From: Entomortierella parvispora E1425 | Lineage: Eukaryota > Fungi > Mortierellomycota | DNA length: 64,000 bases | Assembly: GCA_020891255.1 (NCBI GenBank) | Contig: BQFW01000005.1 | Location: forward strand, 186,001-250,000 | Direction of reading: 5' to 3' | In this document: in pieces, positions 19,001-51,879 of the stretch | How the letters are laid out: every line of letters starts with the position of its first letter | Position numbering within the stretch: the stretch's first letter is position 1 | The notes under the pieces: generated by a model | What the model saw: only the letters and a program-made list of their open reading frames with translations | What the model was told of the DNA's origin: nothing | Databases searched by the model: none | Position numbers and translations under genes: made by a program

Positions 19001-19159
19001 GACAATATCCGGATGGCCCATGAGGATGATGACGACGACAACAACGACGGCGATGATGACGACGACGAGTTTCGGGGCAGATACAGGGACGAGGGCGAGT
19101 ATGAAGATGAGGGCATGGGTCTAGAAGATCCTGAAGAAAGATCCATGTTTGCAAGTTAA
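16034..19159 (+). CDS. Patatin-like phospholipase / triacylglycerol lipase (TGL3/4-like, DUF3336 + patatin), multi-exon
   Basis: WKNDP..GYYD, LYSQTYHGTKK.IEDY, YGRTALCLSGGAGFGYYHLGVVRAL, GTSAG, LTFLEAYERTGRILNISV, FKDGSLRADIP, NYTIVSQVNPH. Confidence 0.95.
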
Positions 19160-19511
19160 ACTGGCTCTCTCCATACTCATCGCGCTACGCACTTTGAAAC
19201 AACCTATACCAATAAAAAAAAAAGGATCATCCCAATGGCTGTAGTGAACTGTCACCCATGGCAATGGAGTAGAGGCGGAGGAAGAGTGCAAGGCAAGGAA
19301 GTGGTGTAAAACTTTCCGCTCCTATCACACAAGCAGTACCTCTCATTACAGCGTCTTTGTCATAGAGATTTGATTCGTAAGTCAATATCTGCAGTCTCCT
19401 GGCCTTTGATCGTTCAACTCATCTCAGAATCCCTTTTTTCCAAGGAAAGGGACTGCATCCTCGACAAAGCCACAACTGCGACTTCTCCAAAGCTTCTTTG
19501 TGAGTGCAGGG

Positions 19512-19625
19512 CAAGGATTTGCTTTCAAGAACCAAGGACTCGATAACCGTAGTCTCAGGATACTGCTGAAAGATGATGATAACTACACGCGCAAGTATAT
19601 CCAATGATCTATGGTGGTTCTCTTG
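19512..19625 (-). repeat. Dispersed repeat / decayed gene relic, copy 1
   Basis: Aligns by eye with 22127-22243 (same orientation) and, including its flank from 19501, with 39025-39086 (inverted): shared CAAGGATTTG(C/T)TTTCAAGAACCAAG..AGTC(T/C)CAGGATACTGC.GAAAGA..ATCCAATG..TGGTTCTCTTG. Confidence 0.75.
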
Positions 19626-20267
19626 TGATCTTCATGGGCTGAGTTGCAGTAAAATGAGGAGATGTGTGGGGATGGGGCACTGCGAAAGTGGGTGCTCCTG
19701 CAAAAGTTGAAGTGTCACGATTGAGTCTCGAACGGCCCGATGTATCGTTGAGAACTACGAGGGTTAGATAACAAAGTCCCGGAGGAAAGAAGGCTGTACA
19801 TCTTGAGCTATCGGTCAATCGCACTCGACATCTGACCCTTTGCAAGGTAAAAGACGCCTTCACTGGATACTCTTAGGCAATGAAGAGTTGAGCCAGGAAA
19901 CCAAGCAGCTTGATCCGTCAATGGTTCAAAAAAAAAAAAAAAAAAAAGTTCCATCCGAAGATTTTTCCAGTGGAAGTTTGACGCGCTTGAGAAGTTCCTT
20001 GTTCTTGATCATCTACTAAAAAAATGGGGCCTTGAGAAGCTCTTTGTTCTTGATCATCTACTTCATTCAGGGATCCATATCCAAGAGTATAAGCGATGTG
20101 AACTCAAGGAGCTCCTTTGAATCCTGGCCTCCCCTTCGTTTTGCGTCAAGCCAAGCCTTCGACTTTGAATCACTTATTTAACTCTGTGTCCATTTCACAT
20201 CTTTCTACCCAATTCAGTCAAGCTCCACAACTGCCTCTACCACCACTCCAACCTCCAGCACCACACA

Positions 20268-22053
20268 ATGAAGTTCCAATATCTCATCGCCTTTGTTGCT
20301 CTCTTAGGCTTTGCCTTTGCTGCCCCAGCGTAAGTAGGCATCCATTCTGAACAGCAGCGTCAGGGTGTCGTCTGCCGGCATCTTTGTCATATACATGTCT
20401 GACCCTCTCCATTGGCTTTTTTCATTTTGCTTCATCAGGCCGTAAGTTCAAGAATGCAGTTGCCGCAATGTGCAACATCTATATCTATAATCCATTTACA
20501 TGATTTCCACAAAGATCACATCTAACATGGTTTTCTTTCTCTCTTTTTCGGCATCTCTGCTCTGTGACAATCAGTGGGTAGGTTGAATCCTTTGCCTCTC
20601 CTCGAGGACAAAAAAAGTATAGTGGTGAGATCGACAACAACGACAACAACGGAGAAACTAACCCCATGTCATTCTCTTTAGCTTAATTAGCGGGTAAGTC
20701 GCATCTACGAACTAGTGCTCCAGGGCAATACCAGAGACACAGCTACAGCAGTACCGAAACTAACCCTGAGCCATTTTCCTCTGATTCTGGCTTATCTCCA
20801 TTAGCGAGTAAGTTGAATCTACGGACTTTTATTCGAAGACAATGACAGAGATGCAGCTGCAGCAATACCAGAACTAACCCTGATCTATTCTCCTCTGTTT
20901 CTGGCTTATCTCCATCAGCCCGTAAGTTGAATCCACGAACTTGTGCTTGAGGATAGCGACAGAGACGCAGCTGAAACAACAAAGAAACTAACCTTGAGCC
21001 CTTCTCCTATTCCTTGGCCACCTCATTAGCGAGTAAGTTGAATCTACGGACTTGTATTCGAAGACAATGACAGAGATACCGAAACTAACCCTGAGCCATT
21101 CTCCTCTGATTCTGGCTTATCTCCATCAGCCTGTAAGTTGAATCTACGGACTTTTCTTCGAAAACAATGACACAGACGCAGCTGCAGGAATACCAGAACT
21201 AACCCTGATCTATTCTCCTCTGTTTCTGGCTTATCTCCATCAGCCCGTAAGTTGAATCCACGAACTTTTGCTCGAGGACAGCGACAGAGACGCAGCTGAA
21301 ACAACAAAGAAACTAACCTTGAGCCCTTTTCCTGTTTCTTGGTCACCTCCATTAGCAAGTAAGTTGAATCTACGGACTTGTACTCGAAGACAATGACAGA
21401 GACTCTGCTGCTGCGGCAATACCGACACTAACACTGAGTCATTCTCCTTTGTTTCTGGCTTATCTCCATCAGCCAGTAAGTTGAATCTACGAACCTGCGC
21501 TTGAGGACAATGTCAGAGGCGTAGCTGTTGCTGCTGCGGCAATACCGACACTAACACTGAGCCATTCTCCTTTGTTTCTGGCTTATCTCCATCAGCCAGT
21601 AAGTTGAATCTACGAACCTGTGCTTGAGGACAATATCAGAGGCGTAGCTGTTAACCCCGGTCCTTGTCCCCCGATGTTTCTGCTCACCTCAATTAGTATG
21701 TAAGTCAAACCTATAGCCTTTCATCTGCTTCAAGGACGCGACAGTTGAGGAGACTGTGGTCAACATGGTTAATTATCTCAGGCTGTGAAGCCATATCTAC
21801 CTGTTTGGCCTAATCGCTGATCATTCTCCTATTGGCGTCTTCGCTTGGTCTAGGCATGTAAGTTGACCGGAGGAAAGCGCTTCTGGTTCAAATAACATTC
21901 TGTGTGCGAATCTTCTCTCACCCACCTCACTGCCATCGCTGTATTTCCACTCCATTAGCCTGTAAGTCCTTGTTGGTTTATTAAGTACCAAAACCAAAGA
22001 ATGTTTTAGTTCCTTGTTAACGCCTTACCTTTTCCCATCAGCCTCCACCATAG
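20268..22053 (+). CDS. Micro-exon gene encoding a 38-aa secreted peptide precursor MKFQYLIAFVALLGFAFAAPAPGGDPDLPNHHMHPPPP
   Basis: Exons: 20268-20329; 20439-41 GCC; 20575-77 TGG; 20691-93 CGG; 20805-07 CGA; 20919-21 CCC; 21030-32 CGA; 21130-32 CCT; 21244-46 CCC; 21356-58 CAA; 21473-75 CCA; 21596-98 CCA; 21697-99 TAT; 21854-57 GCAT; 21959-61 CCT; 22042-53 CCTCCACCATAG. Each internal exon is flanked by YAG and GTAAGT (one GTAGGT). Most upstream introns have a CTAAC branch site, the rest CTGAC/TTAAC/CTAAT-like variants. The joined 117 nt form an uninterrupted ORF with a signal peptide. Confidence 0.8.
20578..21696 (+). repeat. Tandem array of ~100-123 bp intron+micro-exon units with a 325-bp higher-order duplication
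   Basis: Unit consensus GTAAGTTGAATCTACG(G/A)ACTT..GA(A/G)GACAATGACAGAGA..GCAGCTG..AACTAACC(C/T)TGAG..TTCTCCT..TTTCTGGCTTATCTCCATYAG-NNN; 20808-21029 closely matches 21133-21355. Confidence 0.95.
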
Positions 22054-22126
22054 TCAGACTAAGATGTTCACCTGGCCCACGATTAGGGCTGAAATCCTTT
22101 CGTCGAAACTTTCTCACGAATGCCAT

Positions 22127-22243
22127 CAAGGATTTGTTTTCAAGAACCAAGCGATCTGCAGTGACTATAGTCCCAGGATACTGCAGAAAGACGATAAACA
22201 CGCTTGCACACACATCCAATGTTTCCACGCCTTGGTTCTCTTG
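22127..22243 (-). repeat. Dispersed repeat / decayed gene relic, copy 2
   Basis: Homologous to 19512-19625; ORF-track peptides LDILARVVIIIFQQYPETTVIESLVLESKSL vs LDVCASVFIVFLQYPGTIVTADRLVLENKSL. Confidence 0.75.
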
Positions 22244-22360
22244 AGGCGGTTGTGTACCAAGCGTTGATCTGACGCATCACAGTCGTCTTCTAAGCTCTTT
22301 TCAACACGTTGTATGCCTTGAGAAAAAGAGTGGAGGGTGACAAAGAAAGAAGCCAACCCA

Positions 22361-22400
22361 TCCAATGAAGGGAGCAGGAATCCAATGAAGGGAGCAGGAA
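22361..22400. repeat. 20-bp exact tandem duplication TCCAATGAAGGGAGCAGGAA x2 (contains CCAAT)
   Basis: Seen directly, upstream of the PA-RING gene. Confidence 0.85.
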
Positions 22401-22534
22401 GGAGAGGCCCCTCTAATTGCTGTCAAAGTGAAGGAGCTGGGATTCGGCCCCATTCGCCGACTGCCACGCGATTTTTTGGGACTGGAACGTGACATCTAAT
22501 TTTTTTGACCTTTTTTTCCATGCAGCCTTCGCCC

Positions 22535-22586
22535 ATTCGTTCGTTCGTTCATTCGTTCGTTCGTTCGTTCGTTCATTCATTCATTC
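22535..22586. repeat. (TTCG/TTCA)n microsatellite
   Basis: Seen directly, upstream of the PA-RING start codon. Confidence 0.85.
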
Positions 22587-22670
22587 TTCTGGATACTCTC
22601 GCTTCTCTTTCTCGTCCGCAACCTCCTAGCCAACCCTTCCATTAACCACCATTCAACACACCAAGCAAGC

Positions 22671-24221
22671 ATGGCTTTTCGAGGAGCTACTTTCCTGCTC
22701 TTTGTCAACTGGCTATGCATCGTCATGTGGCTGACTTCGACCATGGAATCATCAGAGTCGACCGTCACTGTCATCGTAAGGTTAAACATGCTTCTTGTTG
22801 TCTCCTTCTCTTCCTCATGTATCGCATCGCGTCTAACCCATGTCTACTCCCATGTCTTGCAGGCCACCAACGACACCTATATCACCCGCACAGCCGGTTT
22901 TGGTCCGCGGATTCCAGAGGAGGGTCTCCTTTTGAACGTTATTGCCGTTGAATCTCTTGACCCAACAGAGGAAACAACGGCCTGTCATGGACCTATTCCA
23001 GCCCCTAAAGACAAGTATAACCCTTGGGTTGCCCTAGTGGAGCGCGGAGGAGAATGTACCTTTGCTCAAAAGGTCCGCAACATGCAACAGTCCGGAGCAC
23101 AAGCAGTGATTGTAGGCGACAACCAAAAGAATGGACTGGTCACGATGTATGCACGAGGTAAGTGAACATGAAACAATGAGAAAAAAACCATTTCAACAGT
23201 TGTTGGTGCGACTCTGGCCTGCGTGCGACACATGGATATAGAGGGATATGGCACCATGGCAAAAATAGTAATGGCTAATTCTCTCTTTTCTTCCTCTTCT
23301 AGAAGACACATCGGATATCACCGTTCCATCCGTGTTCATCACTCAGAACCACTACCGTGAGCTGCAGTACTTTAGCATGGATCTCGGCCAAGGATTTGCC
23401 GTCTTGTTGATGCCTGACGAGGAGGATTGGTAAGCCTTCAAAAAACACCCAAGGAAATTGAATGCGGACCAACTTGATCAGAGAAAGTAACCCCTTTTTT
23501 TTTAATGAATATTAGGCCGATTCTGGACGCAGTCATGTTTGTGATCTTGTCGCCAGCATTTGCAGTTCTGTTCATGTTTTTCCTCTGGAAGATGCGGGAA
23601 CGTCGACAGCGATTGGCAGATCTGGCTCCACCAGAGGTCGTGAGCAACTTGCCTGTTAAAGTCTTTTTCAAGTCCAAGGTCGAGGATAATGACGCAATCG
23701 AATGCGTGATCTGTCTGGAGGAGTACGTGGATGAAGACGAGCTCAGGATATTGCCCTGCAAACATGAATATCATGTGGCATGCATTGACAAGTGGCTGAT
23801 TACACGCAAAAAGTTTGTAAGTATACCTGGAAGAAGGACATAATGACGAATCAGGCCAACGGGAAATGTTTTTAAACTTCTATATTTTTTGTTTTTGTGT
23901 GGTAATTCTTAGTGCCCAACATGCAAGCGGGACATCTGTGCTCCATCAGAGACTACACCACTCCTGGGATCAGGAATGCAACCAGATTACGCATCAGGAA
24001 GCAGCAGCAATGGAAACACGAGTGCGAGCGCCAACTCTTTTAGTAGCACAGCCTCATTAGCCTCACCCACATTGGCATCTACAGGAGCAGCATCAGAGCA
24101 GGACGATCGGCCATCTGAAGTGATTATCCCCGTGTCTGAGCATCCAGTGGCAGAAGAACCTACAGCGGAACGGCCCTCCTCAAGCACTGAGGAGGAGAGT
24201 CATGTTCTGAACAGGGTATGA
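22671..24221 (+). CDS. PA-domain transmembrane RING-H2 E3 ubiquitin ligase (RNF13/RNF167/RMR-like), multi-exon
   Basis: N-terminal hydrophobic signal; RTAGFGPRIP; VALVERGGECTFAQKVRNMQQSGAQAVIVGDN; DITVPSVFI; TM helix; RING-H2 CVICLEEY..ELRILPCKHEYHVACIDKWL..CPTCK. Confidence 0.93.
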
Positions 24222-24664: not shown

Positions 24665-25939
24665 ATGAAGAGCTCGGTCCTCTGTACAAGCAAGCCTAGC
24701 ACGCGCACAGACAATCTTGCAGATGGTCTCATCTTCAGGAACATAGACATGCTGGAAGACTCCATCCTGATATCCGAATTATCTTCATCATCTCAACCTC
24801 AAATTTCTTCGCCCAGGCTTCTCTATGTTTTGTATTCGACCTCTGCAGCACCGCCATCATCGACAACCGGGGCGATCGATTCAGAACCGAGTCTGGGTGC
24901 GACAGGAAGAATCGTGAGCATTGTCGTCTTGGCCACATTGCTTTTCCTGTGTTGCACTGGAGTGGCAAGCTACTTTCGCTGGCGGCAACAAACTCGATTC
25001 TACAAGGAGAAAGGACAGGTGCTCCGGATCTGGAATAACAACCAGTCCAGGAGGGAACCATCGCCACCGACCCCAACATCTTCCACTGTCAGCGAGCTGG
25101 ACAGCAGTAAGTGTTCAGGACTCGGGCCAAGCATCAAGGCAACAACCTCCAGCATCGCGGTTGATGCTCATCTTCGTACGCAGGGCTTCAAGATGAAATT
25201 AATGACAACTTCTTGGCCAACCTGGAGGTCTCCTCGCCCATTCACCACCTCCTCTGCAGCTGCCACAGTACCTCCAGTTGCAGTTACATTCAACAAACAT
25301 GCCGTCGCTACGGCCTCAGACCCTCCAGCAGCACCCAGTACCTTTGCCTTGGCCGGGTATGTGCCCGATCCCGTCGTTGGCGCCTATATGGACAACGCAC
25401 GAAGGCAATACGCAGCCCATCTCGCCAAGACCGGGAACTACCCTCCTCATTACCTGAACCCCATCACGGCACCCAACCTCCTCGCGCCCACCGTCCCGGC
25501 CTCTCTCCCTTCCTTCACTCGACAAGACTCTGATGTCTTTTCCTCCTCCTCGATCGCCTCCAGGACTTTGAGAAAGAAACCAAGGAGCATTTGGGAACGA
25601 GCCTCGGATCGGTTCTCCAACCGCCATGCTCGCTCAGTGGGTCGTTCGCGCGTATCCAAGAACCATGTCTCTCGCTTCTTTCAAGAGAATGCCCGCCCAC
25701 ATTCGCACCCTCTTTACGCACCCCGATATGATAGCGATGATGAGGACGGAGAGGAAGAGGACTTGGATGAGGAAGAGGGGGGCTGTGCGCCAGCTGGACA
25801 AGATAAGGAAGGAAGGGCGTATAGACACCCGAATGACTTTATGGTCCGAACACCCATGACGGTCCAGGAGGCTCAGGCTGCAGCAGCCAGGATCATGGCA
25901 ATGGGGGAGGAGAGGAAAAGAAAGATGGGGGTGTCATAG
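24665..25939 (+). CDS. Hypothetical single-pass membrane protein (Ser/Pro-rich)
   Basis: 424-aa ORF with one TM segment (IVSIVVLATLLFLCCTGVASYF) followed by basic residues; 5' end uncertain. Confidence 0.65.
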   Translation: MKSSVLCTSKPSTRTDNLADGLIFRNIDMLEDSILISELSSSSQPQISSPRLLYVLYSTSAAPPSSTTGAIDSEPSLGATGRIVSIVVLATLLFLCCTGVASYFRWRQQTRFYKEKGQVLRIWNNNQSRREPSPPTPTSSTVSELDSSKCSGLGPSIKATTSSIAVDAHLRTQGFKMKLMTTSWPTWRSPRPFTTSSAAATVPPVAVTFNKHAVATASDPPAAPSTFALAGYVPDPVVGAYMDNARRQYAAHLAKTGNYPPHYLNPITAPNLLAPTVPASLPSFTRQDSDVFSSSSIASRTLRKKPRSIWERASDRFSNRHARSVGRSRVSKNHVSRFFQENARPHSHPLYAPRYDSDDEDGEEEDLDEEEGGCAPAGQDKEGRAYRHPNDFMVRTPMTVQEAQAAAARIMAMGEERKRKMGVS

Positions 25940-49943: not shown

Positions 49944-51879
49944 TTAGGGTGCTGTAGTTGATTCCGTACCTTCCTCCACGGTTGTGCGACGGGTATTTGT
50001 GGTCGCTGGCTCTTCCACAGACGTAGTGTTGTAAGGTCTGCTAGGCAGTGGGGGTGTGCGGGCACCATCCAGGGGTGGGGTAACACGGTTGCGGGCTATA
50101 GAAAGGATGCAAAAGAAAAGGATTGGATTAGCCACACGCCTCTATAGAGATGTCAGGACAGGCAAATTTTAAAAGAAAAAAGGTATCCTTACCAAGGGGC
50201 TCATCGTCATCCAAGTTGGATCCGAATCGAATGGGTTCACGGTTACGGTCAACGTTGTTGGACTCCCACTGTTCGTTGTTGGGGTGGGATCTAACATAGA
50301 AATGAATAGAAATACCATGTTAATAGACTTGTCCAAAAAAAAGGCCTCTTTTCCTGTGTCCAACAGCGCCTCGGTATCTCTTCTCACCTGTATCCATCAT
50401 CGTAATGAGCCTGGTTGTTCATGTTGTTCTGTCTTTGAGCGGCAGACTCAGCTCTGGAAGCCTTGAACTGGTTGTACCATTCCGTCACCTTTTTCTTGGT
50501 GGCTGATCAAGTATGAAAAGGAAGAAAAAAAAAAGGTCGGTCCTTTGTTCTCCCAGTACGGCGCGTGCATTCCAAATCCACATCTAACCCGCACTTACTG
50601 TCTGCGGCAACGTTGAATCGCTCCTTGATCTTGGGCAATTCCTCTACACAACAGAATGACAAGAAAGGTGCAATTGGTTAATATTGAGTGACCTGTTGAC
50701 GCGAGTTTCTCATCCAGTGTCGTGTCTTTTCAGCTTCATTTACCATCCATGAGCTCCTTGAACTCTGTCGCGAAGGAGGGACCCTCGTCCTGTGGTTGTT
50801 GCTGCTGCTGTCCACGGATATTCTGTCTATCCCGAGCTAAGATAAGGATCCAAAAGTGAGGCCAAAGAAGAAAAAAAAAAAAAAGAGTTAAGAACAGGGT
50901 CCTGAGAATGACGATGTGAAAAAGTTATGACGCAAGATCCCAGAAAAAAAACGCTCTTCCTAGCACCATGCTGAGAACCAAAAAAAAAGGTCCAGAAAAT
51001 GAGAACCCATTGTCATTCATATATCCCATGATTACCTCTGTATTCGTCCATGGCGGCCAAAGTGCGCGCAAAGTCTTCGTCTGCTCGCAACTGCTGCTCC
51101 GGGGTCGAGGTTGAAGCCAACAGAATGGGCTATTCGGAAGAACATTTTCAAATGAAAGCGTCACGCGTTAGAGTTTAGGCAGATAACAAAAATCGTTTGA
51201 GGACAAACTGGCCCTGGGAAAACGCAAATGGCAAACGTACATCAATCTCATGAGGTTGTCCTCCCAGGTTCATGTTTGCGACACCTTGTGACAATCCGTC
51301 CGACCCCTGACGACGTGGCAATGCTGGGGCACCTCCTTGGTTCAACCGCGCGGCTGCGGGTGCTGTTGCAGGGACAGGCGTGGGTGCAGGTGGAGGAGGA
51401 ACAGCAGGACTCTCGGCTTGGAATTCAGGGTCCGAGATTTCCAACAATGCATTGATGCTGGCCTCGACATTCCCGCGATGACTCTCAAGCACAAACTCGC
51501 AGACCTCCTTCTCGACTGTGGGAAAGGCTTCAGTCAAAATAGCCAGCTTGGCTTCTCTCTCAGACTGTCCTGCTGGAACAGGGGCGGCGGTAGGTGCAGG
51601 CGCGGTTGCAGTTGCAGTTGTGGTGGGGGCAACGGTGGTGGCGACAGGGGCGGCAGCCGTTGTAGGGACAGCAGGGTGAACCTCCAGGTCGTCCTCATCC
51701 TCGTCGTCGTCAAAGATGTTGTTGGTTTCTTGGGGTGACTTTGGCTTGGCGGTTGTCGTGGTCGTAGTGGTCGTAGTGGTAGCCTCCGTGGTGGTTTCAA
51801 CGGGCTCGTCCTCCAAAGCTGTCAAGTCGGAGACCGTGGGGTCTGCCTCTGGAGTCTTGTCCTTATCTGCGGATGACAT
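49944..51879 (-). CDS. CUE-domain ubiquitin-binding protein (Cue5-like), ~7 exons
   Basis: LAILTEAFPTVEKEVCEFVLESHRGNVEASINALLEISDP CUE domain; QLRADEDFARTLA; ELPKIKERF..TKKKVTEWY. Confidence 0.85.

What the first reader, a model, noticed from the sequence alone, without database searches (positions are those of the whole stretch)
20268..22053. Secreted-peptide gene built from single-codon (3-nt) micro-exons
Seen: a signal-peptide exon ends GC|GTAAGT. It is followed by 14 internal sites of the form YAG-(3 or 4 nt)-GTA(A/G)GT, separated by 80-154 nt introns with branch-point-like motifs and pyrimidine tracts, and then a terminal exon. Joining them gives 117 nt with no internal stop: MKFQYLIAFVALLGFAFA|APAPGGDPDLPNHHMHPPPP*. 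So ~1.8 kb of DNA encodes a ~20-aa mature Pro/His-rich peptide at about one residue per exon. The intron interiors have diverged by substitutions and indels, yet every GT and AG is retained, which points to selection on splicing (inference). Known: Schistosoma micro-exon genes (MEGs) encode variable secreted proteins, but with larger exons. I know of no described fungal gene made almost entirely of 3-nt exons. Gene finders and short-read aligners would miss it.
Basis: partly seen in the sequence, partly recalled or inferred. Interest (0 to 1): 0.96.

Follow-up and report, generated by a model that had tools for sequence, protein, structure and literature searches.

The report
Gene of tandem introns, one-codon exons
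In the soil fungus Entomortierella parvispora, a 1.8-kb stretch reads as a signal-peptide exon followed by 15 normal-looking introns separated by exons only 3-4 bases long, which would be a very unusual gene for a small secreted peptide, but the strain's one available RNA data set shows no transcript from it.

Summary
Window 20268-22053 holds a signal-peptide-like exon, 14 sites YAG-N3/4-GTA(A/G)GT, 15 introns of 80-154 nt and a 12-nt last exon. Joined, they give a 117-nt frame for MKFQ...PPPP*. YAGNNNGTAAGT occurs 13 times in the window, 12 of them here, against 0.49 expected.

The window is E. parvispora E1425, BQFW01000005.1. Introns 3-12 are one tandemly duplicated family with a three-unit higher-order repeat. 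Introns 1, 2 and 13-15 no longer align but keep their splice signals.

A metagenome contig (L089) carries the same intron family, again separated by 3-nt exons. In both arrays the splice-site columns are nearly invariant, and the two variable exon letters are among the most diverse columns of the unit. A dead satellite would not look like this.

Against it: the strain's own RNA contigs cover both neighbouring genes but nothing across 19364-22610. No gene is annotated there. The open frame is forced by the structure, so it is not evidence of coding.

Verdict: probably a real micro-exon gene that is silent in the sampled culture (about 0.55), with splicing unproven. Unchecked scan notes report similar arrays elsewhere in this genome. 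My literature searches found no such gene described.

The parts
20268..20329 (+). Exon 1. ATG with A at -3 and an in-frame stop 35 codons upstream. Encodes MKFQYLIAFVALLGFAFAAPA(2 nt) and ends in phase 2 at GC|GTAAGT. It looks like a signal peptide, with a likely AFA|AP cleavage site.
20330..20438 (+). Intron 1, 109 nt. GTAAGT ... CTGAC (36 nt from the 3' end) ... CAG. Not alignable with the repeat family.
20439..20441 (+). Micro-exon 1, GCC
20442..20574 (+). Intron 2, 133 nt. GTAAGT ... CTAAC (49) ... CAG. Not alignable with the family.
20575..20577 (+). Micro-exon 2, TGG
20578..20690 (+). Intron 3, 113 nt. GTAGGT ... CTAAC (29) ... TAG. A diverged member of the repeat family (55-65% identity).
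20691..20693 (+). Micro-exon 3, CGG
20694..20804 (+). Intron 4, 111 nt, family member
20805..20807 (+). Micro-exon 4, CGA
20808..20918 (+). Intron 5, 111 nt, family member; 95% identical to intron 8
20919..20921 (+). Micro-exon 5, CCC
20922..21029 (+). Intron 6, 108 nt, subtype B; 92% identical to intron 9
21030..21032 (+). Micro-exon 6, CGA
21033..21129 (+). Intron 7, 97 nt; 93% identical to intron 10
21130..21132 (+). Micro-exon 7, CCT
21133..21243 (+). Intron 8, 111 nt
21244..21246 (+). Micro-exon 8, CCC
21247..21355 (+). Intron 9, 109 nt, subtype B
21356..21358 (+). Micro-exon 9, CAA
21359..21472 (+). Intron 10, 114 nt
21473..21475 (+). Micro-exon 10, CCA
21476..21595 (+). Intron 11, 120 nt
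21596..21598 (+). Micro-exon 11, CCA
21599..21696 (+). Intron 12, 98 nt. A diverged family member with TTAAC 42 nt from the 3' end.
21697..21699 (+). Micro-exon 12, TAT
21700..21853 (+). Intron 13, 154 nt. GTAAGT ... CTAAT (40) ... TAG. Not alignable with the family.
21854..21857 (+). Micro-exon 13, GCAT. The only 4-nt exon. It moves the phase from 2 to 0 and so sets the stop at 22051-22053.
21858..21958 (+). Intron 14, 101 nt. GTAAGT ... TAG. It has no clear CTRAY branch motif near its 3' end (only CTCAC-like).
21959..21961 (+). Micro-exon 14, CCT
21962..22041 (+). Intron 15, 80 nt. GTAAGT ... TTAAC (21) ... CAG.
22042..22053 (+). Last coding exon, CCT CCA CCA TAG. The 3' UTR must end before 22623, where the RNA contig of the next gene starts.
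20694..21650 (+). Tandem array as called by TRF: period 114, 8.5 copies, 75% matches. One unit is one intron plus one 3-nt exon. The higher-order period is three units (introns 4-5-6, 7-8-9, 10-11-12).

Best explanation
This is a lineage-specific gene of Entomortierella parvispora (Mortierellomycotina) for a small secreted peptide. After the signal-peptide exon, the coding sequence is split into 14 micro-exons (13 of 3 nt, one of 4 nt) by 15 ordinary spliceosomal introns.

Inferred history: a module of one intron plus one codon was duplicated in tandem several times, including a three-module block. Each duplication added one residue. The older modules at both ends then diverged until only the splice signals remained.

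Inferred mechanism: each short intron is recognised on its own (intron definition), through a perfect GTAAGT donor, a CTAAC-type branch site and a pyrimidine-rich 3' end. Neighbouring introns must be removed one after another, because the donor of one overlaps the acceptor region of the previous one. Signal-peptidase cleavage after AFA would leave the 20-residue peptide APAPGGDPDLPNHHMHPPPP, rich in Pro and His.

The gene is silent, or nearly so, in 7-day vegetative mycelium of the endobacterium-cured strain. That is the only condition with RNA data.

Shown: the anatomy, the duplication history and the pattern of conservation. Inferred: transcription, splicing, translation and secretion.
For: - Fifteen same-strand introns have consensus signals and lengths of 80-154 nt. 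RNA-verified introns of the neighbouring gene are 86-145 nt with GTAAGG/GTAAGT/GTAAGC donors.
- The pattern is about 25 times more frequent than chance. It persists in five introns that have lost all similarity to the repeat family.
- Exon 1 looks like a signal peptide at roughly the 1-in-1000 level among ATG-started frames of the window.
- L089, from a metagenome, carries the same intron family (GTAAGTTGAATC ... TCTCCATCAG), again with 3-nt exons. The junctions are 88-96% identical to ours and the interiors about 70%.
- Over the 20 aligned units, the 5' splice site is 0.99 conserved, AG 1.00 and the interior 0.69. Exon letters 2 and 3 rank 3rd and 1st of 114 columns in diversity here, and 6th and 1st of 113 in L089.
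- Between higher-order repeat partners, exon letters differ at 7 of 18 positions and intron positions at 78 of 619 (Fisher p = 0.005).
- There is no Rfam match, and the introns fold no better than shuffled sequence, so nothing points to a structured intron-borne RNA.
- Isolated exons of 1-3 nt are transcript-verified in another fungus, Coprinopsis cinerea (PMC12230235).
Against: - The strain's RNA-seq contigs (X2) show spliced joints in the neighbouring gene, so they are RNA. They have zero depth from 19364 to 22610. No contig lies on the putative 5' UTR, exon 1 or 3' UTR.
- The RNA-guided AUGUSTUS annotation has no gene between 19159 and 22671.
- The exact 38-aa product is not in a collection of 15 billion proteins.
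- The open frame carries no information, because codons of the form N-N-C cannot be stops.
- The peptide is too short for a homology search, and nothing is known about its function.
- Intron 14 lacks a clear branch motif.
- No orthologous locus could be fetched.
Confidence: 0.55

Rival explanations
1. The locus is a relic. A former small gene, or a single intron with its flanking bases, expanded as a minisatellite. The array is no longer transcribed, or never was, and its splice signals survive only because the copies are young.
For: No RNA contig over the locus and no annotated gene. The core is a plain tandem repeat by TRF. Most hits of the generic pattern in metagenomes are ordinary satellites.
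Against: Five introns are too diverged to align, yet they keep perfect GTAAGT and YAG. A related array in another organism keeps the same signals while its interiors differ by about 30%. The exon letters are the most diverse columns, set between the least diverse ones. Neutral decay does not produce that pattern.
Confidence: 0.2
2. The locus is transcribed and spliced, but the micro-exons are not all included. Some or all are skipped, or the array is removed stepwise as one composite intron. The products would then be a mix. These include a form lacking the 4-nt exon, or lacking all micro-exons, that reads on into a 74-codon frame at 22043-22267.
For: Thirteen of the 14 micro-exons are 3 nt, so skipping them keeps the frame. 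Skipping the 4-nt exon, or all micro-exons, opens a 95-109-aa product. Adjacent splice sites overlap sterically, which favours skipping.
Against: The 74-codon frame has no family match and a low recognition score. A second frame is open for 66 codons there, so long open frames are cheap in this stretch. If the micro-exons were always skipped, their letters should evolve like intron sequence, not faster.
Confidence: 0.15
3. The introns are the functional product, not the peptide. They might yield small RNAs, stable lariats or a hosted non-coding RNA, with the tiny exons serving only as spacers, as in non-coding snoRNA host genes.
For: The intron ends are conserved beyond the minimal splice signals: GTAAGTTGAATC is 0.98 conserved over 20 units.
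Against: No Rfam family matches at E <= 1. The folding z-scores are 0.1 to 1.3, no better than shuffled sequence. The interiors are the variable, indel-rich part. The array starts right after a signal-peptide-like ATG exon.
Confidence: 0.05

Closest known systems
Micro-exon genes (MEGs) of Schistosoma and tapeworms
   Same: A signal-peptide first exon is followed by a run of very short, frame-preserving exons and a short last exon. The products are small secreted proteins that evolve quickly. Ordinary gene finders handle these genes poorly. (Known from the literature; I did not test homology.)
   Different: MEG exons are about 6-36 nt, whereas here they are 3 nt, one codon each. Here the introns are tandem copies of one unit. 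The host is a fungus. No transcript has been seen.
Aphid 'bicycle' effector genes (PMC9168663, listed)
   Same: Secreted, fast-evolving proteins encoded by many micro-exons. The family is recognised by gene structure rather than by sequence.
   Different: The exons are much longer than 3 nt, the introns are not tandem copies, the host is an animal, and expression is proven.
Isolated exons of 1-3 nt (27 three-nt exons in 26 genes of Coprinopsis cinerea, PMC12230235; also RPS24 and cytohesin-1 in animals)
   Same: They show that spliceosomes, fungal ones included, can include exons of 3 nt or fewer.
   Different: These are single micro-exons inside ordinary genes. They are not runs of 14 that make up almost the whole coding sequence.
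Introner-like elements and introners (near-identical introns that multiply within a genome)
   Same: Many introns share one sequence and have strongly conserved ends. The same intron family turns up in a second locus or organism (L089).
   Different: Introners are dispersed in unrelated genes, whereas these are head-to-tail copies. The stable structures reported for fungal introner-like elements are absent here (z >= 0). No terminal inverted repeats are visible.
Intron gain by tandem genomic duplication (Rogers model), and recursive splicing at AG|GT ratchet points
   Same: Tandem duplication creates new introns. Consecutive acceptor-donor junctions are used one after another.
   Different: In the Rogers model a duplicated exon segment becomes the intron. 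Here a whole intron plus one codon is duplicated. Ratchet points leave 0 nt, whereas here 3 nt stay in the mRNA.

Membership tests
Micro-exon gene (MEG-type architecture) | First exon encodes a signal peptide | tested here: met
   The sequence is MKFQYLIAFVALLGFAFA|AP. Its hydrophobic core ranks in the top 7 of 1233 ATG-started frames in the window. It is the only one that also has K/R at position 2-3 and a small-x-small motif. This was a heuristic check; no dedicated signal-peptide predictor was available.
Micro-exon gene (MEG-type architecture) | Most of the coding sequence lies in very short exons whose lengths are multiples of 3 | tested here: met
   Thirteen of the 14 internal exons are 3 nt and one is 4 nt. 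This is below the size range described for MEGs.
Micro-exon gene (MEG-type architecture) | Transcripts show the micro-exons joined | tested here: inconclusive
   The strain's RNA contigs have zero depth over 19364-22610. Contigs show presence, not absence, and only one growth condition was sampled.
Micro-exon gene (MEG-type architecture) | Sequence homology to a described MEG family | not testable with these tools
   The 38-aa product is below the 40-aa minimum of the homology search. An exact look-up found nothing.
Introner-like element | The same intron sequence occurs in several unrelated genes of one genome | tested here: inconclusive
   Within the window the unit occurs only in this array. 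L089 carries the same family. Unchecked scan notes report more arrays in this genome, but I could not read them.
Introner-like element | Predicted secondary structure more stable than in ordinary introns | tested here: not met
   Six units folded with z-scores from 0.09 to 1.30.
Non-coding snoRNA/ncRNA host gene | The introns carry a recognisable structured RNA | tested here: not met
   No Rfam match at E <= 1. No structure signal. The interiors are the least conserved part.
Plain minisatellite | Head-to-tail copies whose columns all diverge at similar rates | tested here: not met
   It is a tandem repeat by TRF. But column diversity ranges from 0 at the splice sites to 0.69-0.73 at exon letters 2-3, against an intron mean of 0.25.

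The most novel reading that the evidence does not exclude
Intron-plus-codon modules may be a general way to build and vary peptides. Tandem duplication adds one residue per module. Each 3-nt exon can be skipped without changing the frame, so one locus could give many peptide variants. Selection acts on the two informative exon letters, while unequal crossing-over keeps the introns alike. The metagenome scan suggests that this is not confined to one gene. It found arrays of 10-54 variable 3-nt exons in contigs of very different base composition. One such array sits in frame between a start exon and a protein-kinase exon in a very AT-rich contig that looks like it comes from an arbuscular mycorrhizal fungus (Glomeromycotina).
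Probability: 0.15. Interest if true: 0.95.

Novelty: new variant of a known kind. Interest (0 to 1): 0.8.

Why it matters
If the locus is spliced as predicted, it would be the extreme case of a split gene. It would have about one intron per codon, and 93% of the transcribed gene (1669 of 1786 nt) would be intron. That would show a fungal spliceosome processing 14 consecutive 3-4-nt exons.

It would also show a simple route by which a peptide grows one residue at a time, through duplication of an intron-plus-codon module. Such genes would be a class of small secreted peptide genes that gene finders and short-read aligners miss. The RNA-guided annotation of this genome has nothing at this locus.

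Unchecked scan notes and the metagenome hits suggest many more such loci. Peptide repertoires of Mucoromycota and other eukaryotes may therefore be under-counted.

Tried and rejected
- RNA runs. Two searches listed no run labelled RNA. Run X2, labelled 'DNA?', turned out to be the strain's RNA-seq. It showed no contig on the locus.
- Homology of the product. The peptide is too short for the search, and an exact look-up was negative.
- Orthologous locus by synteny. The intron-less 396-aa neighbour has only two close relatives, both on contigs of 3-5 kb. Those contigs keep the RING / 396-aa / TPT gene order but stop short of the array. The exhaustive representative search added nothing usable.
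- Open reading frame as evidence of coding. Rejected, because the N-N-C codons of the array cannot be stops.
- A longer product through the 74-codon frame at 22043-22267. It has no family match and a low recognition score, and another frame is equally open.
- The ORF on the minus strand at 21044-21358. It has no family match and is an artefact of the repeat.
- snoRNA or other structured intron RNA. Nothing was found.
- Transposon origin. No terminal inverted repeats are visible. Repeated insertion with a target-site duplication would give identical spacers, not variable ones.
- The one other YAGNNNGTAAGT site in the window (50593-50604, minus strand). It is an ordinary exon end.
- Literature. 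Nine searches found no description of runs of 3-nt exons in fungi or elsewhere.
Full report
WHAT IS THERE. An ATG with A at -3 opens a 62-nt exon ending GC|GTAAGT. It has an in-frame stop 35 codons upstream. Fourteen sites of the form YAG-N3/4-GTA(A/G)GT follow. They define 13 exons of 3 nt, one of 4 nt (GCAT, 21854-21857) and 15 introns of 80-154 nt. The last exon is CCTCCACCATAG (22042-22053). Joined, the exons give 117 nt encoding MKFQYLIAFVALLGFAFAAPAPGGDPDLPNHHMHPPPP*.

The pattern YAGNNNGTAAGT occurs 13 times in the 64-kb window, 12 of them here. Shuffles give 0.49 expected and at most 3. Fourteen of the window's 34 GTAAGT lie here, all on the + strand.

ORGANISM AND SURROUNDINGS. The window is Entomortierella parvispora E1425 (Mortierellomycotina), assembly GCA_020891255.1, contig BQFW01000005.1. 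The locus lies in a 3.5-kb gap in the annotation. A patatin-lipase gene ends at 19159 and a PA-RING gene starts at 22671. The annotation was made with AUGUSTUS using RNA-seq hints (PMC8759367).

ANATOMY OF THE INTRONS. Fourteen donors are GTAAGT and one is GTAGGT. Eleven introns have CTAAC or CTGAC 29-49 nt from the 3' end, three have weaker variants, and intron 14 has none. The last 30 nt are 63-77% pyrimidine. Four introns of the neighbouring PA-RING gene are verified by RNA contigs. They are 86-145 nt long with GTAAGG, GTAAGT or GTAAGC donors. The array's introns are therefore typical of this genome, or closer to consensus than typical.

HISTORY. TRF finds a 114-bp tandem array at 20694-21650. 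In an alignment of all 15 units, introns 3-12 form one family. Its higher-order period is three units: intron 5 matches 8 at 95%, 6 matches 9 at 92%, and 7 matches 10 at 93%. Introns 1, 2, 13, 14 and 15 align at only 32-54% with every other unit, which is no better than noise. All five still keep GTAAGT and YAG, and the exon next to each is 3-4 nt. They may be old copies or independent introns. Either way, retention of these signals is not what neutral decay gives.

A RELATIVE. I scanned public metagenome contigs with a generic pattern, GTAAGT-N85-115-YAG-NNN-GTAAGT taken twice. Most hits are plain satellites with the same 'exon' in every copy.

One hit, L089 (Ga0302182_10036516), carries the same intron family as the window: GTAAGTTGAATC ... 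TCTCCATCAG. It has at least 12 micro-exons of 3 nt with different letters. Its junction regions are 88-96% identical to ours and its interiors about 70%. The contig begins inside the array, so its first exon is unknown. Its last intron and downstream sequence are not similar to ours, so it is a homologous array but not demonstrably the orthologous locus.

CONSERVATION PATTERN. I aligned 20 units, 10 from the window and 10 from L089. The six donor columns are 0.99 conserved, the first 12 nt 0.98, AG 1.00 and the interior 0.69. The three exon letters are 0.85, 0.50 and 0.30 conserved.

By pairwise diversity, exon letters 2 and 3 rank 3rd and 1st of 114 columns in the window array. They rank 6th and 1st of 113 in L089. 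Mean intron diversity is 0.25 and 0.28 respectively. Between higher-order repeat partners, exon letters differ at 7 of 18 positions and intron positions at 78 of 619 (Fisher p = 0.005). The pairs overlap in a chain, so they are not fully independent.

With phase 2 set by exon 1, these two letters are codon positions 1 and 2, so every change alters the residue. The conserved first letter, C, is codon position 3. This argues that the exon letters are seen by selection and the splice sites are held fixed. It is the best evidence for function that sequence alone gives.

The open frame itself is no evidence, because N-N-C codons cannot be stops.

EXON 1. There are 1233 ATG-started frames of at least 20 codons in the window. 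Seven are as hydrophobic over residues 5-18, and only this one also has K/R at position 2-3 and a small-x-small motif. Cleavage after AFA would leave a 20-residue Pro/His-rich peptide. The N-terminal Ala-Pro-Ala-Pro resembles dipeptidyl-aminopeptidase substrates. That, and any metal binding by HHMH, is speculation on my part.

RNA. No run labelled RNA was listed. Run X2, from the same sample as the genome reads, behaves as the strain's RNA-seq. Its contigs carry four GT..AG joints in the PA-RING gene and Illumina adapters at their ends. The genome paper describes such a library, made from 7-day mycelium of the endobacterium-cured strain.

X2 covers the patatin gene up to 19204 at depth 222 and the PA-RING gene from 22623 at depth about 50. 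Depth is zero in every bin from 19364 to 22610. No contig lies on the putative 5' UTR, exon 1 or 3' UTR, even partly. Contigs drop rare molecules and only one condition was sampled. The result therefore says 'silent or very low there', not 'never expressed'. It remains the main reason for my moderate confidence. The exact product is also absent from the protein collection.

ALTERNATIVES CHECKED. There is no Rfam match, and the introns fold no better than shuffled sequence (z = 0.09 to 1.30). Intron-hosted structured RNAs and the structured introner-like elements are therefore unlikely.

Skipping the 4-nt exon, or all micro-exons, reads into a 74-codon frame at 22043-22267. That frame has no family match and a low recognition score, and another frame is open for 66 codons there.

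A transposon origin does not fit. No terminal inverted repeats are visible, and repeated insertion with a target-site duplication would give identical spacers, not variable ones.

KNOWN PARALLELS. Literature searches found no description of runs of 3-nt exons. Isolated exons of 1-3 nt are transcript-verified in the fungus Coprinopsis cinerea, with 27 three-nt exons in 26 genes (PMC12230235). The step that looks mechanically hardest is therefore possible in fungi.

The closest architectures are the micro-exon genes of schistosomes and the aphid bicycle genes. Both encode secreted proteins, and both have much longer micro-exons and unrelated introns.

OTHER LOCI. Unchecked notes of this scan report further arrays elsewhere in the same genome, with 11, 18 and 48 micro-exons among them. 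I could not read those pieces.

The metagenome hits include independent arrays with variable 3-nt exons in contigs of very different base composition:
- L011: 10 exons.
- L099: 10 exons.
- L005: 17-18 exons, in frame between a start exon and a kinase exon, at 14% GC.
- L101: 13 exons.
- L118: 54 exons with 53-nt introns.
- L071: 27 exons.
- L058: 17 exons. L058 and L118 share a homologous first exon.

In most of these arrays the exon letters are again among the most diverse columns. I chose these arrays because their exons vary, so that result is biased.

VERDICT. My estimates are:
- about 0.55 for a real, correctly spliced secreted-peptide gene that is silent in the sampled culture;
- about 0.15 for a spliced locus with variable or no micro-exon inclusion;
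- about 0.2 for a relic;
- about 0.05 for an intron-centred function.

Noticed in passing
L005 (WNGF01082377.1), minus strand, whole contig: A very AT-rich contig (array 14% GC). A start exon (MSEGNNNKDRNITNDEF) is followed by 17 GTAAGT-flanked 3-nt exons, plus one more with a GTAAAT donor. The reading frame then continues into an exon that I recognise, from memory, as the N-terminus of the expanded kinase family of arbuscular mycorrhizal fungi (Glomeromycotina) (...EWIPYNKFKNIEYFDKGGFSTIYRAIW...). The start exon and the kinase exon are in the same frame. L101, L018 and L057 look like the same kind of contig.
   Followed up: partly
L118 2781-6362 (+), L058 7194-8249 (+), L071 247-1984 (-): Arrays of 54, 17 and 27 three-nt exons separated by introns of about 53 nt, from one metagenome project (Ga0193742/Ga0193743). 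L118 and L058 have homologous 39-aa first exons ending ...LLYFPQIV. The source organism is unknown. The 54 micro-exons of L118 read without a stop in two of three phases.
   Followed up: partly
L099 1-1700 (+) and L011 whole contig (-): Two further independent intron families (GC 0.49 and 0.31). Each forms a tandem array with about 10 variable 3-nt exons. Both contigs begin inside the array, so the first exons are missing.
   Followed up: partly
window 19928-19947 and 19980-20060: A run of 20 A. Shortly after it comes a direct repeat of about 28 nt (GAGAAG(T/C)TC(C/T)TTGTTCTTGATCATCTAC), 200-300 nt upstream of the ATG. TATAAG at 20088 and TATTTA at 20175 are the only TATA-like strings upstream.
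   Followed up: no
window 22360-22400 and 22536-22586: Two short tandem repeats between the putative gene and the PA-RING gene: a 20-nt unit present twice, and (TTCG) x 12.8. The DNA unitigs break at 22529-22592.
   Followed up: no
window 24749-25939 (+): An intron-less 396-aa gene with no Pfam family. It has only one close relative cluster among 1.84 billion representative proteins (66% identity), known from short soil-metagenome and Logan contigs that keep the RING / this gene / TPT order.
   Followed up: partly
run X2: The run listed as 'DNA?' is in effect the strain's RNA-seq. Its contigs are spliced at GT..AG and end in Illumina adapter sequence. The run label misleads searches restricted to RNA.
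   Followed up: yes
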